The translations under genes were made by a program, and so were the position numbers. The notes beneath the pieces are model-generated. The model was not told the DNA's origin. It did not search any database and was given only the letters and a program-made list of their open reading frames with translations. A stretch of DNA of 64,000 nucleotides from Lama guanicoe. Taxonomy: Eukaryota. The stretch covers positions 1,186,829 through 1,250,828 of the forward strand of contig MU054925.1 of assembly GCA_013239625.1 (NCBI GenBank). Reading direction: 5' to 3'. Shown here one piece after another: positions 12,301 through 36,025 of this stretch (positions are counted from its first letter, which is position 1; the number at the start of each line of letters is the position of its first letter).

Positions 12301-15300
12301 GCAAACAGTTACACAGGGAGAAAAGCACTACAAGTGCAAACCAGAACATATCCACAAAGGATTCAGACATTGGAACGGTCAGACACAGAGCATAATAAAC
12401 ACATTATACTGAATAAATATAAATTAAGATTGAAAATATCAGTAGAGAATTAGATAATAAAAGGTGACATAACAGAGTTTAGTAAGAACCCAACAGAAAT
12501 TCTAAAACTGAAAAAAAGGCCAAAATTAAGAATTCAATGGATGAGTTTAATAGCAGTTTAGACACAGGATTGAAGAATTAGTACACTGAAAGATAGGTCA
12601 GAGGAAATACTAAGAATTAGAAAGACGGAAAATGTACAAGAGATGATAAGAGATACAGAAGATACTGTGAGAAGGTCTAGCACACATATAATTAGGAGTT
12701 ACAAAAAGAAAGCGTTAGGTTGAATAACGCCCTCCCCTCCAGAAGTCTATGTCCTAATTTCTAAAACCTGCGAATATGTTACCTTATATGACAAGAGCAA
12801 TCGTGCAGATGTGATTGAGTTAAGGAGATAGGGGGAGATTATCCAGGTGTGTCCCATGGGTCACAAGGGTCCTCATAAGTGAGGCAGGAGTGTCAGAGTC
12901 ATACAGAGAGATGAGAAGTTGTAAAACTGCTAACTTTGAAGATGGAGAAAGGGGCCAGGAGCCAAAGAAAGCACAGCCCCACTTCCACCCTGATTTTTAC
13001 CAAGTAAGACCCATTTTGGACTTCTGACATCCAGAATTATAAAATAATAAATCTGCATTGTTTTAAGCCACTAAGTTAGTAGTAATTTGTTACAGCAGAA
13101 ATGAGAAACTAGCATAGAAAGAAAAGAGATAGTGGAATAGAGGCAATACATGAAGAGTTAATGGCTGATAATTTTTCAGAACTGATTAAAGAAATTGTTC
13201 TGCAAGTTAAACCTAATGAATCCCAAGCAGAATAAATAAACATAATAACAAAAAGAGAATTGAGGTAACTATATTGTTGTCAGACAAAATAGACTTTGAG
13301 TCAAAAAAGGTTACAAAAGACAAAGAAGGACTTTACATATTGATAAATTTCCACTCTAACAAGAAGTAACAATTGCAAACATATATGCACCTAACAAAAT
13401 ATATATGAAAGAAAACCGTACAGAACTGAAGGGAGAAACAGCTCTACAATAAAAGATGGAGATGTCAATACCCTACAATTTTAACAATGGATAGAATAAT
13501 CAGACAGATGATCAATAAGGAAATAGAGGACTCGAACAATACTTTAAACCAACTAGACTTAACAGACATATGCTCCCTCCAACAACAGCAGAACACACAT
13601 TTTTCTCAAGTGCTTNNNNNNNNNNNNNNNNNNNNNNNNNNNNNNNNNNNNNNNNNNNNNNNNNNNNNNNNNNNNNNNNNNNNNNNNNNNNNNNNNNNNN
13701 NNNNNNNNNNNNNNNNNNNNNNNNNNNNNNNNNNNNNNNNNNNNNNNNNNNNNNNNNNNNNNNNNNNNNNNNNNNNNNNNNNNNNNNNNNNNNNNNNNNN
13801 NNNNNNNNNNNNNNNNNNNNNNNNNNNNNNNNNNNNNNNNNAAATGAAAACATCATACCAAACAACAAACTGTGGAATACAGCAAAACCAGTACTGAGAG
13901 GGAACCTGATAGCTTTAAACACATGCAGTAAAAGAGAAGATACCCATTAGGATGGCTGTTATTAAAAAAAAAAAAAGAAAATAACAAGTGTTGGCAAGGA
14001 TGTGGAAAAATTGGAACCCTTGTGCATCGCAGATGAGAATGTAAAATAGTGCAGCTGATGTGGAAAACAGAAAGACAGCTTCTTAAAAATTAAACATAGA
14101 ATTACCGTATGATCCAGCTATTCCACCTCTGGGTATAACCCAAAAGAAAGGAAAACAGGAACAGATACTTATACACCAATGCTCATAGTAACATTACAGC
14201 AGCCAAAACATGGAAACAACCAAGGTCCATTAACAGATGAAGGGATAAACAAAATATGGTATTTCCATACAATGAACATTACTTAGTCATAAAAAGGCAG
14301 AAAATTCTGAAATGTGCTACAACATGAATAAAAACATTATGCTTAGTGAAATAAGCCAGAGCAAATATTGTGCAATTCCACTTACGTGAGTTACCTAGCA
14401 TAGGAAAATTCAAAGAGAGACAGAAAGTAAAATAGAGGTTTCCAGGGGAGGGAAGAATGGAAAGTTACTGTTTAAAGGGTACAGTGCTGTTTGGAATGAT
14501 GGAAAAGTTTTGTAAATAGATAGTGGTGATGGTTATACAACATTGTGAATGTACTTAATGCCACTGAACTGTACACTTAAAAACAGCTAAAATGGAAGGC
14601 ATCTTTGAGCTCACTGAGCAAACACCATCCTGAACTAAAAAACTGTACGAAGATGTTTTCATTGAAATTAAATGGAGGCAGACATGACCAAGGAATATAG
14701 TAAGAATTTGATCTCTTTATGTATCCTGTGATAGATGAATGTGTGGAGACAGCAACTAGTGGGCAACAGAACAATACTAAAAGGGTGGTAATATGAGGAA
14801 ATAATATCATCATGTTAGAAGCCTTGGAAGAAGTATAAAAAATGGCTGTGTTCACCAGAGAAATCAACTGGTTCCACATGTCCCCTTTTCAAAGGGCTTG
14901 TTTTACTATGACATAAAAATCAGGTCCTGTACATTTTCATAATGAACTTTTTTGTTAAGTAAAGTTTTGTAAAAGTGAAAAGTTAAAATGGTAAATATTA
15001 TATATTTTTACTACAATAAAATGATGTATAGTAAAAAAAAAAGAAATGGTTGAAATGGTAAATTTGGTTACGCATATTTCATCACAATTGAAAAAGGAGC
15101 TCCGAATCAGCCTGTCCACAGCTGCTAGGGGAACCTTCCCACCAGCTGTACACTCGACAGTATGGTCCTACGGGTCAACAGAAACGCTTGATTAGCGAGG
15201 ACCTCCTTGCCCTCCAATATTAACTTGAGTCACCTAGGGTCTGTGAATATACTGGGGTGTTTAAACAACGAAATGACTCTGGACAGAATCATTCCAAAAC

Positions 15301-32272: not shown

Positions 32273-35200
32273 TCACAGATGGTACTTGTAGATGGCCCAA
32301 GGGCCCTCCTCCTCGTACTCATGGCGGCTGAGCCACAGGCTCTGGAAGGAGTCTCGGGACACCATGATGGAGCCTCCGAGCCAAGCAGCAACAGCACGGT
32401 GCGGAGAGCCCAGTACAGTGGCACAAGGGCCCAGTTCCTGTCTCAGGCGTTCAGGAAAGCCATTCAACAGGGTGCTACCACCATCCAGCACCACATTAGC
32501 CAGCAGCTGCTCCTGCTGCTTGGCCTCCAGACGGCTGATACTTAGGAGGGCTAGTTGTGGGAGGCCTGGCTGATTGAAGCCTAGCAGATTGGGCTGGAAG
32601 AGGGCCTCGGGGCAGCAGAAGCGCTCAGAGCCCAGCGTGATGACCTGCTTGTCTGGAAGCACAAAGTCCACCCGGGCCTGGGCCTGGGCACGGGCCATCT
32701 CGGCTGTCATGTCCATGGCCACATAGCAGCAAGCCTCTTTAATCTGGTTGACCAGCTCTGCCTTGGGCGGTGAGTGGCCACTTGCCAACAACAGCTGAGC
32801 CAGGTATTCAGTGAGGTCAGCACCAGCCACATCCAGCCGGTAGGTGTCCAGTGGGGCCAGATCCCCGGTGATGATGGGCGCCACATAGGAAGTGCCATGG
32901 CCACTGCCCAGCACCAGCCCAGTGGTGCGCCCATAAGCATAGAGCGCCAGCAGGGCCTGATGCACCGTCTGCATGGCTGGCACATGGAAACGCTCAAAGA
33001 GTATTTCAGCTACCTTTTCTCGGTTGGTGCGCGGTGAGATGGGTGAGTCAGCTACCAGCACCGCCAGCTCCTCGGGCCGCACACCCAGCCTGCAGTAGAA
33101 CAGGTGCTGCCACAGCACCTCCAGCGCATCCCAGTCGGAGACCACTCCTCGATTCAGCACTGAGTAAGAGCCCTCTCGTTTCTCAGGCACTGCATACCTG
33201 GGCTGGCCCTGAACCGGGTGCTGGAGCAGCTGTACGCGTGAGGGCACTACACTCAGGACATGGTCTTCTCCAGCCAGTCCACACTTGGTGAAGCCTGTGC
33301 CTGTGTCGATCACCACAGCTGCCATGTCCTGGTAGGGGCCCAGAGTGTGGCGGCAGAGCACTGGGGACTGCACTGGCAGGGTGTTCATGGTGGGCACCAG
33401 CTCATAGCAGGCCCCTCGGAGCAGACCAAGGTGTGCGACCACTTGTGAGTGTGTAATGTCCTCAGCTGTCAGCTTGAACCGGGGACCCTGGGGCTCAGGG
33501 CCCACCATGGCCATGGGCAAGACCTTGCAACCAGTGCCAGATGTGGTGAATGGGATCAGGGACAGCTGCGCCTCTTGGGCCCTGGGAGAGCAGCCAGGTT
33601 GCCAGGATGAGAGCTGATGTGTGCTGGAGCTTTGAGTAGCACTGGCACCAACTTTTTCTCTGTTCACAGAGACACAGGTCTCCTCGGGGGGCAGGGGCAC
33701 CCGAACCACCCCCACGTGGGTACGTTGGCCCAAGGGCTCATGTTCCTGGCACAAGGTGGAGGCCTGACCAGGTTCCCTAGTGGCAGGGGGCCCTCGTGAG
33801 AGGGTAGGCACAGTGGAGATGGGAGGCACTTGGGAAAAGGGAGGCTGCAAAGTGAGAGAAAGCTGCCTGCCATTAGGTGTCCCAGGAAGAGGGGGCTGAC
33901 CAAGAAGGCAAGTCTGCTTGGTGGAGGGGGCCTGCTCAGCTAGGGGTGGCTGTCCCGAAAGGTAGGTCTGCCTGGTGTGGGGACAGTGCTCTGCAGAAGG
34001 AGGCTGACTGGTTGAAGGGGGCTGTCTGGCGAGGGTACACTTCTCGGCTAGTGGGGGCTGACCACCGAGGGGACCCTGCCCAGCATCTTGGACCTGAGGG
34101 TGGTCAGGATGAGGAGTAATGACCTCTTTCTGACCGTTGCTGCCTACATCCTTCTGGAGCTGGGGTCTGGGCACATCCTGGGTTTTGGCTGGTGGTACAT
34201 GCTCTGGGCTCTGCTCTGAGTTCATCCACTGCAATTTCTTGGCCTGGACCATAGAGGTATTCTGCATCCTGGAGGCATCCAGCATCCAGATGGTGCGACT
34301 AGCTTCATTTTTTTCAGCATCAGGTTTGGACCAGCCAGGACCATGGGCATGGCTAAGTGTCCTCTCTCCAAATTGGAGGGGCATCCCCAGTGGAATGGGC
34401 CCAGTGAGCATCCCCATCCTGATGGGTGTCTCAGTACCAGGGGAGTCCACTGACTCCAGGTTGACCCTGGCCTCCTTGGGAACCAGGGCCACCTCTCGGT
34501 AGCTTCCAGATGAAAGGCTAGAGGGCACAGGGCTGGACACCATGGGCGTGGTAGACCAGAGGCTGGAGCGATTGCTGTCAGGGGAGAGAATGGGCATGGC
34601 TAATGGCCGGGTAGACAGCGTATTTTCAGAGGCACGGATGGATGAGTGGCTGGGCATGAGGCCCACCAGCACTGCGCGTGAGCCCATGGGGTCGTGGCAC
34701 AGTAGCCCCATCCTGGTATTGCCTGTGGCCATATCAAACACCAGCACACGGTCTTCTACAGCATCCTGGAGCTGACAGGTAGGGGCACTGGAGAGGGGTA
34801 TCTGCATGGCTTCCCTGGGAGTCTCTGCCGGGGACTGCTTGTGGTAGTTTACTTGGTGGGCAGACAGGGGCACTTTGGAGCAGGTGTTGTCGCAAACATT
34901 GAAGGGCTGCTGATCTGGCTGAGAGCTGCAGATCTCCTGGCTACCCCTCTGGGACTTGGGGGTCCCTGGGGGCCCTGAGCCTGGTTTTGGGCTGCTTGGC
35001 CTGGAGGTACAGACCAGGGGCTTCTCCAGTTGGTTTTCAGGCTGCTTGGGTAACACAAGCCTTCTGGCAACCTCGAGCTCCTGGGCCTGGTCTGGGGACT
35101 GATTTGGAGTGGGTGCTGGGGTGGGAGGCTCATCCTGAGAATGGAAATTCACTTTGTCCTGGCAGGATGTGACCCCTTTGGAAGACTCCGAGTAGATTGA

Positions 35201-36025
35201 CCATTGATTGCCATGATTCCTGGGAAAGAGGTCTTGGGACAGGCCCTTGGTGATGGCATTAGTATTAGTCAGGGGGTCGAGGTTGCAGGTGTAAGTTTCA
35301 ACTGCTACTGATATTGGGGTTGTATCCAGAGCTGGAATATTTGCCTGAGTTGAAGCTGGAGGAGCCTGAGTTGGACATGGACACTTGTCCTGGCCCTGAT
35401 CTTGCACTGGGGCCAGAAGAGGAACTTGGGCTGCAGCTGAGCCATCCTCCCCTGGAAGAAAACAGGGTAGCCACCGGCTCTTTCTAATGCCCATTGGGGC
35501 TATCTGATCAGGGCTGCAGGGGCCTCTGCCCCAGCCTACTAGAACTTTAGCTGGAGCCTTGCCCTCCCCCGAAATCTGCACCTGAAGCCGGGAGCAGCAG
35601 AGTCCGTGCTGGGCCATGTCACTGGTACCGTCACTGCGCGTGCACACAGGTAAGGCCAGGGTCCTGTTCTCCATGTTGAGATGTGTTTGGGCTCCCACGA
35701 CGGGGCTTGGAAACGGGCTAGTGGAGGAGAGGGTCAGGGCATCCTGGGAGGCCTGCTCACAGCCACATTGGGAGCTAACCTCAGCAGGGTCCTGGAGTTG
35801 CTGGTGAGTGGGCTTGAGGGTGTGGGTCTGGGAGGCTGGGCCATAGGCCCCATCAGTGATGGCCTTGGTGGACAGTGACAAGCCCTGCCTCAAGTATACA
35901 GATCCTGAGTTTATCCAGGGTCCCTGGGACCCTCTAAGGCCACCCCCCAGCTGCTGGCTACCAGCCAAGGGGTGGCCCTGGGGGCCTGATGGATCAGGGT
36001 CCCCCACTTTCTTGTTGACTTCCAT
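32273..36025 (-). CDS. ACTL11: Actin-like protein 11, single exon, 1250 aa (long low-complexity N-terminus plus C-terminal actin fold at aa ~901-1250)
   Basis: Uninterrupted 3753-nt ORF with strong Kozak (ACTATGG). Actin motifs VVIDTGTGFTKCG, QALLALYAYGRTTGLV, ERFCCPEALFQP, NVVLDGGST, WLGGSI, EYEEEGP. Position between CAMKV and MST1R matches the recalled Actl11/ACTL11P locus. Confidence 0.9.
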   Translation of the reverse strand: MEVNKKVGDPDPSGPQGHPLAGSQQLGGGLRGSQGPWINSGSVYLRQGLSLSTKAITDGAYGPASQTHTLKPTHQQLQDPAEVSSQCGCEQASQDALTLSSTSPFPSPVVGAQTHLNMENRTLALPVCTRSDGTSDMAQHGLCCSRLQVQISGEGKAPAKVLVGWGRGPCSPDQIAPMGIRKSRWLPCFLPGEDGSAAAQVPLLAPVQDQGQDKCPCPTQAPPASTQANIPALDTTPISVAVETYTCNLDPLTNTNAITKGLSQDLFPRNHGNQWSIYSESSKGVTSCQDKVNFHSQDEPPTPAPTPNQSPDQAQELEVARRLVLPKQPENQLEKPLVCTSRPSSPKPGSGPPGTPKSQRGSQEICSSQPDQQPFNVCDNTCSKVPLSAHQVNYHKQSPAETPREAMQIPLSSAPTCQLQDAVEDRVLVFDMATGNTRMGLLCHDPMGSRAVLVGLMPSHSSIRASENTLSTRPLAMPILSPDSNRSSLWSTTPMVSSPVPSSLSSGSYREVALVPKEARVNLESVDSPGTETPIRMGMLTGPIPLGMPLQFGERTLSHAHGPGWSKPDAEKNEASRTIWMLDASRMQNTSMVQAKKLQWMNSEQSPEHVPPAKTQDVPRPQLQKDVGSNGQKEVITPHPDHPQVQDAGQGPLGGQPPLAEKCTLARQPPSTSQPPSAEHCPHTRQTYLSGQPPLAEQAPSTKQTCLLGQPPLPGTPNGRQLSLTLQPPFSQVPPISTVPTLSRGPPATREPGQASTLCQEHEPLGQRTHVGVVRVPLPPEETCVSVNREKVGASATQSSSTHQLSSWQPGCSPRAQEAQLSLIPFTTSGTGCKVLPMAMVGPEPQGPRFKLTAEDITHSQVVAHLGLLRGACYELVPTMNTLPVQSPVLCRHTLGPYQDMAAVVIDTGTGFTKCGLAGEDHVLSVVPSRVQLLQHPVQGQPRYAVPEKREGSYSVLNRGVVSDWDALEVLWQHLFYCRLGVRPEELAVLVADSPISPRTNREKVAEILFERFHVPAMQTVHQALLALYAYGRTTGLVLGSGHGTSYVAPIITGDLAPLDTYRLDVAGADLTEYLAQLLLASGHSPPKAELVNQIKEACCYVAMDMTAEMARAQAQARVDFVLPDKQVITLGSERFCCPEALFQPNLLGFNQPGLPQLALLSISRLEAKQQEQLLANVVLDGGSTLLNGFPERLRQELGPCATVLGSPHRAVAAWLGGSIMVSRDSFQSLWLSRHEYEEEGPWAIYKYHL

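What the first reader, a model, noticed from the sequence alone, without database searches (positions are those of the whole stretch)
34661..34750. Second, degenerate actin phosphate-1 hairpin in the ACTL11 N-terminal extension
Seen: within the otherwise Pro/Ser/Gln-rich N-terminus, aa ~426-455 read RVLVFDMATGNTRMGLLCHDPMGSRAVLVG. This aligns without gaps to the protein's own actin-domain start (AVVIDTGTGFTKCGL; D, TG, T and GL are identical). It also aligns to the conventional actin N-terminus [24 protein letters not shown], including the RAV that the C-terminal domain has lost. Inference: this is a relic of a duplicated actin fold, or a retained beta-hairpin module that could domain-swap into, or mimic, actin subdomain 1. 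I am not aware of it having been described.
Basis: partly seen in the sequence, partly recalled or inferred. Interest (0 to 1): 0.75.

Follow-up and report, generated by a model that had tools for sequence, protein, structure and literature searches.

The report
Conserved actin-like beta-sheet island in ACTL11
A 34-residue stretch in the long, floppy front part of the sperm protein ACTL11 is conserved about as well as its actin domain, is predicted to fold into a small three-stranded sheet, and is probably a leftover copy of the first three strands of the actin fold.

Summary
The peptide is aa 426-455 of a single-exon 1250-aa minus-strand ORF, a camelid ACTL11 orthologue.

- **Conservation.** Among 57 full-length placental orthologues the island (aa 423-458) is the best-conserved 36-aa window of the N-terminal extension, rank 1 of 864. 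Its mean column conservation is 0.90, against 0.68 for the rest of the extension and 0.92 for the actin domain.
- **Age.** A diverged version lies about 35 aa from the annotated start of 5 marsupial proteins. Non-mammal orthologues of about 400 aa lack the extension.
- **Similarity to the actin start.** It is modest but above controls. hhalign gives P 0.002-0.008, and 0-3 of 300 column shuffles reach the observed score. Island tiles score 25-27, against at most 18 for 36 other tiles.
- **Database searches.** Pfam and PDB sequence searches do not find actin.
- **Structure prediction.** AlphaFold2 makes the island the only folded element of aa 401-900: three strands, pLDDT 76-89. It gives no sign of docking on the actin domain.

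Best reading, at about 0.55: a relic of an internal duplication of the actin N-terminus, kept as a small beta-sheet docking module.

The parts
32273..36025 (-). ACTL11 open reading frame, 1250 aa, one uninterrupted exon
   Evidence: It is 97% identical over the extension to Camelus ferus LOC102519592. The horse orthologue is named ACTL11 by its source.
34655..34756 (-). Conserved island, aa 424-457 (E D R VLVFDMATGNTRMGLLCHDPMGSRAVLVGLM)
   Evidence: It is the best-conserved 36-aa window of the extension, rank 1 of 864, with mean conservation 0.90. It holds 14 of the 32 extension positions that are at least 98% identical. D431, T434, G440 and C443 are invariant in placentals plus marsupials.
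34733..34753 (-). Predicted strand 1 (aa 425-431), ending in D431
   Evidence: AlphaFold2 of aa 401-900: strand at model residues 25-31, block pLDDT 76-89. It aligns to the first strand of the actin domain.
34694..34720 (-). Predicted strand 2 (aa 436-444). The turn M432-A433-T434-G435 lies between strands 1 and 2.
   Evidence: The turn aligns to the phosphate-1 loop TGTG of the protein's own domain.
34658..34675 (-). Predicted strand 3 (aa 451-456, AVLVGL)
   Evidence: With a 2-residue gap it aligns to the RSV...VG segment of non-mammal orthologues.
34610..34747 (-). Full span of the profile match to the actin start (aa 427-472)
   Evidence: hhalign against 22 non-mammal orthologues: 44 columns, score 24.7, P 0.003. 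None of 300 shuffles reach this score.
33275..33319 (-). The protein's own phosphate-1 hairpin (aa 903-917, AVVIDTGTGFTKCGL)
32288..33328 (-). Actin domain (aa 900-1246)
   Evidence: Pfam PF00022, E 1.2e-81, profile positions 3-406 of 410.
33650..33718 (-). Weak second actin-like stretch (aa 770-792, HVGV..PEE..V.V/NREKV). Membership in the finding is uncertain.
   Evidence: My own profile Smith-Waterman against non-mammal orthologues: 7 of 400 shuffles reach the score. hhalign is not significant, P 0.07-0.38. NREK is absent in marsupials.

Best explanation
Aa 424-457 of ACTL11 form a small three-stranded antiparallel beta-sheet that folds on its own. It sits in an N-terminal extension that is otherwise disordered and, in boar sperm, heavily phosphorylated.

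Origin: it is most likely the surviving copy of the first three strands of the actin fold (strand 1, phosphate-1 turn, strand 2, strand 3). This copy would have arisen by an internal duplication of the 5' part of the gene before marsupials and placentals split. It then diverged and became fixed in placentals.

Function: without the rest of the fold it cannot be a nucleotide site. The conserved D, T and G residues more probably hold the tight turn. I infer that the island is a docking piece that pairs an exposed sheet edge with a partner in the sperm head cytoskeleton. The invariant C443 is a possible disulfide point.

Status of each step:
- Shown: location, conservation, presence in marsupials, above-shuffle similarity.
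- Predicted: the three-strand fold.
- Inferred: origin by duplication and the docking role.
For: - **Conservation.** 0.90 against 0.68 for the flanks and 0.92 for the actin domain; rank 1 of 864 windows; 14 of the 32 near-invariant extension positions lie in the island.
- **Age.** The island is present, diverged, in 5 of 5 marsupial proteins found. The same D, T, G and C are kept, and the marsupial extension is collinear with placental aa 400-900. The 22 non-mammal orthologues used have 370-420 aa. In the 7 whose starts I printed, only about 35-65 aa precede the actin domain.
- **Similarity to the actin start.** hhalign P 0.0077, 0.003 and 0.0022. Shuffles reaching the score: 3, 0 and 1 of 300. 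In a scan of 42 tiles, the three tiles that hold the island score 24.9-27.5. The 36 tiles away from it have mean 12.3-13.0 and maximum 18.0. The upstream control, aa 1-409, shows nothing: 134 of 400 shuffles reach its score.
- **Marsupial register.** The top hit of the marsupial-only alignment falls in the same register.
- **Language-model search.** 27 of 30 hits are actin clusters, best score 0.93.
- **AlphaFold2.** Strands at aa 425-431, 436-444 and 451-456 with pLDDT 76-89. Almost all of the rest of aa 401-900 is below 50.
- **Expression.** Boar sperm phosphosites run from Ser85 to Ser822, so the extension is made as protein (PMC8322956, passages).
Against: - The similarity is short and weak. 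Pfam finds no Actin in 0 of 15 island sequences or in the 120-aa piece.
- PDB sequence searches give 0 hits for the single sequence. The profile gives only 3 APC chains at E about 1.
- The marsupial-only score is not above shuffles: 46 of 200 and 65 of 200 reach it.
- The first Gly of the turn is Ala in placentals and Cys or His in marsupials.
- The fold search gives only generic three-strand matches: 13 of 48161 chains reach Z of 2 or more, the best is 2.5, and none is actin.
- The language-model features may have been computed with the whole protein in view, and 168 shared features is just under the tool's 170 mark.
- The rest of a duplicated domain is not demonstrable.
- No partner is known, and no codon data were available for dN/dS.
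Confidence: 0.55

Rival explanations
1. The island is an unrelated, newly evolved conserved beta-sheet or binding motif. Its likeness to the actin phosphate-1 hairpin is chance or convergence, since hydrophobic strand, D..TG turn, hydrophobic strand is a common hairpin pattern.
For: - No database-level hit to actin.
- The marsupial-only alignment is not significant.
- Structural matches are generic.
Against: - The best-matching tile is also the best-conserved one. It stands 5-6 sd above 36 other tiles of the same protein.
- The match extends to 44 columns against the non-mammal orthologues.
- Marsupial and placental versions hit the same register.
- 27 of 30 language-model hits are actin fragments.
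Confidence: 0.3
2. The island swaps into, or mimics, subdomain 1 of ACTL11's own actin domain or that of another sperm actin-like protein, competing with the genuine first three strands.
For: - The island corresponds to exactly the strands that form the start of subdomain 1.
- In the joint model of aa 401-1250 the first ~120 and last ~40 residues of the actin domain are oddly uncertain, with block pLDDT 36-54 and 27-35. This is a hint at most.
Against: - The island is more confident without the actin domain (76-89) than with it (50-54).
- The joint model is poor overall, mean pLDDT 40.6 and pTM 0.31, and no contact map was available.
- Replacing core strands of a folded domain is energetically unlikely (inference).
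Confidence: 0.1
3. The conservation is at the DNA or RNA level, from an overlapping regulatory element or RNA structure, rather than on the peptide.
For: None found. It could not be excluded, because no orthologous DNA was available.
Against: - Substitutions seen among orthologues are conservative at the amino-acid level: M/I/L/V, R/K/S, N/S/K/D.
- Marsupial and placental versions keep the hydrophobic pattern at about 20-25% identity.
- A confident fold is predicted.
Confidence: 0.03

Closest known systems
First three strands of the actin/ASKHA fold (strand 1, phosphate-1 loop, strand 2, strand 3), as at aa 903-930 of this protein
   Same: - Same order and similar lengths of predicted strands.
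- The D, T, G, basic residue and G are in the same register.
- The similarity continues to the segment after strand 3 in non-mammal orthologues.
   Different: - It stands alone, with no helices, no second half of the fold and no adenosine pocket.
- The first Gly of the loop is replaced.
- There is a 2-residue insertion before strand 3, and a further 5 residues in marsupials.
- It does not reach any family threshold.
Disordered N-terminal domains of testis actin-like proteins ACTL7A and ACTL7B (about 55 aa in ACTL7B; PMC10925299, passages read)
   Same: A testis or sperm actin-like protein with a lineage-specific, disordered extension in front of an actin domain.
   Different: The ACTL11 extension is about 900 aa in placentals. 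It contains a folded, strongly conserved island that resembles the actin fold itself. Nothing like this is mentioned in the passages I read.
Non-mammal ACTL11-like 'actin-3-like' proteins (P0083-P0104, reptiles, amphibians, coelacanth, sturgeon, a bird)
   Same: Their actin domain is 43-53% identical to the window's. In the 7 starts printed, a leader of about 35-65 aa precedes ..VVIDTGTG... The marsupial leader of about 35 aa precedes the island in the same way.
   Different: They have one actin start only, with no long extension.

Membership tests
ACTL11 orthologue group (the gene as a whole) | Full-length collinear similarity, extension included, to proteins that their sources name ACTL11 / actin-like 11 | tested here: met
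   97% identity to a Camelus ferus protein and 75% to Equus caballus 'ACTL11' over aa 1-900. 80 hits have E of 0.001 or less among 2130 candidates.
Actin family, Pfam PF00022 (asked of the island alone) | Match to the family profile at or near threshold | tested here: not met
   No Actin hit at E up to 10 for the 120-aa piece, nor for any of 15 island sequences. HMMER's filters drop most weak matches, so this shows only that the match is weak.
Actin family, Pfam PF00022 (asked of the island alone) | Complete two-lobed fold with a nucleotide cleft | tested here: not met
   AlphaFold2 of aa 401-900 gives three strands only, and almost all of the remainder has pLDDT under 50.
Actin family, Pfam PF00022 (asked of the island alone) | Phosphate-1 loop residues (Asp, then Gly-Ser/Thr-Gly, then Lys, then Gly; recalled definition) | tested here: inconclusive
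   D431, T434, G435, R438 and G440 are in register. The first Gly is A433 in placentals and Cys or His in marsupials, and G435 is not kept in marsupials.
Actin family, Pfam PF00022 (asked of the island alone) | Binds ATP/ADP | not testable with these tools
   This needs a binding assay. It is judged unlikely for three strands alone (inference).
Internal-duplication relic of the actin N-terminus | Sequence similarity to the parent segment above matched controls | tested here: met
   3, 0 and 1 of 300 shuffles reach the score. Island tiles score 24.9-27.5 against at most 18.0 for 36 other tiles. The effect is modest, and the marsupial-only test is not significant.
Internal-duplication relic of the actin N-terminus | Same secondary-structure order as the parent segment | tested here: met
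   Three consecutive strands at aa 425-431, 436-444 and 451-456. They map onto the aligned actin strands (the actin strand positions are recalled). This is a prediction only.
Internal-duplication relic of the actin N-terminus | Further collinear remains of the duplicated unit downstream | tested here: inconclusive
   Aa 770-792 against the PEE...NREK segment: 7 of 400 shuffles reach the score in my Smith-Waterman, but hhalign gives P 0.07-0.38. The stretch is predicted disordered.

The most novel reading that the evidence does not exclude
ACTL11 of therian mammals may descend from a protein with two actin units in tandem. On this reading the whole stretch from the island to the present domain (placental aa 426-902) is the wreck of a duplicated actin domain, or of its N-terminal half. 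Only the first three strands still fold and stay under strong selection.

Hints:
- A second weak collinear match at aa 770-792 to the PEE...NREK segment, reached by 7 of 400 shuffles.
- Further by-eye matches (LPxA, D-I/L-T, ELV) in order.
- In marsupials the two Asp positions are about 396 residues apart, close to the ~400-aa length of the non-mammal protein.

The last two hints pull against each other, because the aa 770-792 match would need large compensating insertions and deletions.
Probability: 0.2. Interest if true: 0.65.

Novelty: new variant of a known kind. Interest (0 to 1): 0.5.

Why it matters
ACTL11 is an almost unstudied sperm protein. In the library searched it is only named in passing: 5 papers hold 'ACTL11' (4 were listed; I read passages of one), and 1 holds 'actin-like 11'.

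The island gives the first concrete handle on its 900-aa extension. It is a defined peptide of about 34 residues, predicted to fold, conserved across placentals and recognisable in marsupials. It can be expressed, deleted or used as bait.

If the duplication origin holds, it is an unusual case. A fragment of the actin fold, the three-strand start, would have been kept for more than 100 million years (divergence date recalled) without the rest of the domain. That bears on how pieces of old folds are reused as interaction modules.

It is not a new kind of system. The homology rests on weak statistics.

Tried and rejected
- **Pfam.** I scanned the whole protein, the extension and a 120-aa piece. 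Only the C-terminal Actin domain was found, plus sub-threshold Cementoin, Ndc1_Nup and Erythro_esteras hits, which I treat as noise.
- **PDB sequence search.** Nothing for the single sequence. The profile found only APC armadillo chains at E about 1, which I reject as chance.
- **Fold search.** The aa 401-900 model gave only generic matches at Z of 2.5 or less, so it is uninformative.
- **Whole linker as a decayed actin domain.** hhalign of aa 400-900 adds almost nothing beyond the island: score 28.3 against 24.7-27.5. Block aa 762-900 gives P 0.2, 0.066 and 0.38. I keep this only as the novel case.
- **A 'phosphate-2-like' reading.** By eye, MGMLTGP in placentals and IGLLSGH in marsupials look like the second phosphate loop. 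No alignment tool reported it, so I dropped it.
- **DNA tandem repeats in the ORF.** None found.
- **dN/dS.** Not possible, since no orthologous mammalian DNA is reachable with these tools.
- **Rows dropped.** For the conservation profile I used 57 of the 80 hits, those of 1150-1300 aa. The 23 shorter models were left out. One kept row (P0043) has only gaps at the island.
- **Supplements.** The supplementary data of PMC8322956 (phosphosite tables) are closed and may hold more detail.
Full report
**What is there.** The window holds a 3753-base uninterrupted ORF on the minus strand (32273..36025) that encodes 1250 aa. The protein's actin motif AVVIDTGTGFTKCGL starts at aa 903. Pfam finds one Actin domain, aa 900-1246, E 1.2e-81. 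A search with aa 1-900 returned 80 proteins with E of 0.001 or less among 2130 candidates; 5870 sample-only candidates were left out by the tool. The best hit is 97% identical (Camelus ferus). The horse, dog, Nannospalax and Jaculus entries are named ACTL11 / actin-like 11 by their sources. The gene is therefore a camelid ACTL11 orthologue.

**Is the island conserved?** Yes. I aligned the window's protein with the 57 hits of 1150-1300 aa, dropping 23 shorter models.
- The segment E-D-x-VLVFDMATGNTRMGLLCHDPMGSRAVLVG is nearly invariant from xenarthrans and afrotherians to rodents and bats.
- Mean column conservation is 0.903 for aa 423-458, 0.684 for the rest of the extension and 0.923 for the actin domain.
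- The window starting at aa 423 ranks 1 of 864 36-aa windows. It holds 14 of the 32 extension positions that are at least 98% identical.

**How old is it?** A search with the actin domain (after a frame slip) found non-mammal orthologues in turtles, squamates, alligator, frogs, salamanders, caecilian, coelacanth and sturgeon, and one bird. They have 370-420 aa. In the 7 starts I printed, about 35-65 aa precede ..VVIDTGTG...

A wombat protein and four further marsupial proteins carry an extension collinear with placental aa 400-900. About 35 aa from their annotated start lies a diverged island...KESMIVDICTCQTKFGVVCEG...RPIYVMDNV.... It is only 18-25% identical to the window's island, but the hydrophobic pattern is the same. 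D431, T434, G440 and C443 are invariant across all 62 rows. The island therefore predates the marsupial-placental split. Placentals have about 400 further residues in front of it. Gene models may be incomplete, and I could not check the DNA.

**Is the likeness to actin more than chance?**

| Test | Result |
|---|---|
| hhalign, island against 22 non-mammal orthologues | 44 columns, from the first strand through ...R-S-V...V-G-V-P... to ...P-L-Y-Y-I-G..., three gaps, score 24.7, P 0.003; 0 of 300 shuffles |
| hhalign, island against 57 diverse actins | score 25.05, P 0.0022; 1 of 300 shuffles |
| 42 tiles of 71 aa across the extension | the three tiles holding the island score 24.9-27.5 and 25.5-27.1; 36 tiles away from it have mean 12.3/13.0, sd 2.4/2.7, maximum 18.0/17.7 |
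| My own BLOSUM profile Smith-Waterman | island 4 of 400; upstream control aa 1-409, 134 of 400 |
| Single sequence against an actin HMM | 9-10 of 1000 for the window's island; 23-36 of 1000 for a marsupial one |

In the single-sequence HMM test, 10 and 11 of the 12 printed sequences landed on the phosphate-1 region with the two HMMs. P0168 landed elsewhere with both, and P0167 gave no hit with one.

Results against the actin reading:
- The marsupial-only alignment hits the same register, but its score is ordinary: 46 of 200 and 65 of 200 shuffles reach it.
- Pfam gives no Actin hit for any of 15 island sequences or for the 120-aa piece.
- PDB sequence searches give nothing, or APC at E about 1.

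One further lead: a protein-language-model search of aa 416-476 returned actin clusters, short actin fragments, for 27 of 30 hits. The best score was 0.93 with 168 of 256 shared features. The tool says its calibration was not measured for parts of proteins. I cannot exclude that the actin domain of the same protein coloured the features.

**Does it fold?** AlphaFold2 on aa 401-900, with 62 aligned sequences, made the island the only structured element. Strands lie at aa 425-431, 436-444 and 451-456, with block pLDDT 76, 89, 78 and 77. Almost everything else is under 50. This is the strand, tight turn, strand, loop, strand order of the start of the actin fold (actin strand positions recalled).

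With the actin domain included (aa 401-1250, 83 sequences) the model was poor, mean pLDDT 40.6. The same three strands appeared at pLDDT 50-54. There is thus no sign that the island needs or docks on the domain. No contact map is returned, so docking is untested.

A structure search of the model gave 13 of 48161 chains with Z of 2 or more. The best was 2.5 and none was actin. A three-strand sheet is too generic for that test.

**Is the rest of a second actin domain there?** This is not demonstrable.
- hhalign of aa 400-900 adds little beyond the island.
- Block aa 762-900 gives P 0.2, 0.066 and 0.38.
- My Smith-Waterman finds aa 770-792 (consensus HVGVLRVPLAPEETCVYV/NREKV) against HIFYTELSVCPEELAVLV[9 residues]NREKM of the non-mammal consensus. 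Seven of 400 shuffles reach that score.
- Marsupials lack the NREK, and the stretch is predicted disordered.

I keep this only as the novel case.

**Is it expressed?** A boar sperm phosphoproteome lists ACTL11 with sites from Ser85 to Ser822 and counts it among the most multiply phosphorylated sperm proteins (PMC8322956, passages read; supplements closed). The extension is therefore translated and present in sperm. Eight RNA runs of 3 studies, labelled reproductive system or one coded organism, hold 49-64% of the ORF's sampled words.

**Mechanism.**
- Shown: a strongly constrained island of about 34 aa, present in both therian branches, with a modest but reproducible likeness to the first three strands of the actin fold.
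- Predicted: an autonomous three-stranded sheet.
- Inferred: origin by internal duplication of the gene's 5' part in the therian stem. The nucleotide role was lost, since the cleft needs the whole fold, and the first loop Gly is replaced. The D..TG turn was kept for structural reasons. The present role would be an edge-strand docking element in a disordered, phosphorylated sperm-head protein, with invariant C443 as a possible cross-link point.

I give the origin-plus-module reading about 0.55, an unrelated conserved module 0.3, self-mimicry or domain swap 0.1, and a DNA-level constraint 0.03.

**Comparison with what is known.** Testis actin-like proteins with disordered N-terminal domains are known, for example ACTL7B Met1-Asp55 (PMC10925299, passages read). 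Other papers on ACTL7A, ACTL9 and ACTRT were seen only as a search listing. A folded, actin-like island inside such an extension was not mentioned in what I read. 'ACTL11' occurs in 5 papers of the library (4 listed; I read passages of one) and 'actin-like 11' in 1. The island fails family membership in Actin as a domain. The claim is common descent of a fragment, not membership.

**Verdict.** This is a new feature of a known gene family, of moderate interest.

Noticed in passing
window 34451-34558 (minus), aa 490-525: This is a second conserved island in the extension...SSPVPSSLSSGSYREVALVPKEAR..., with mean conservation 0.85. P499, P501, S502, S505, Y509, L514 and K517 are at least 98% identical. 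It is predicted disordered and recognisable but diverged in marsupials. It may be a phospho-regulated linear motif.
   Followed up: partly
window 35510-35560 (minus), about aa 156-172: This is a third conserved motif, K160-V-L-x-G-W-G166, nearly invariant in placentals. It lies in the part of the extension that the annotated marsupial proteins lack.
   Followed up: no
window about 33860-34090 (minus), aa 646-720: These are degenerate P/Q-rich peptide repeats (GQPPLAE..., QPPS...). They are the least conserved part of the protein, 0.23-0.59, and their length varies between species. There is a sub-threshold Pfam Cementoin hit at E 0.036. No DNA tandem repeat was found at score 40.
   Followed up: partly
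window 33650-33718 (minus), aa 770-792: This is a weak collinear likeness to the actin PEE...NREK segment, with a 9-residue gap. Seven of 400 shuffles reach the score, and hhalign is not significant.
   Followed up: yes
whole gene; proteins P0082-P0104 and P0165-P0168: The extension seems to have grown in steps. The non-mammal proteins have 370-420 aa, with about 35-65 aa before the domain in the 7 starts printed. Marsupials have about 430 aa, beginning just before the island. Placentals have about 900 aa. This rests on gene models only.
   Followed up: partly
model of aa 401-1250 (window 32276-34825): In the joint AlphaFold2 model the first ~120 and last ~40 residues of the actin domain (roughly subdomains 1 and 2) have block pLDDT 36-54 and 27-35. 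The middle reaches 64-89. The cause is unexplained. It may just be a shallow alignment and a long disordered chain.
   Followed up: no
window 13616-13841: This is a run of 226 N, an assembly gap or masked stretch. It was left untouched.
   Followed up: no
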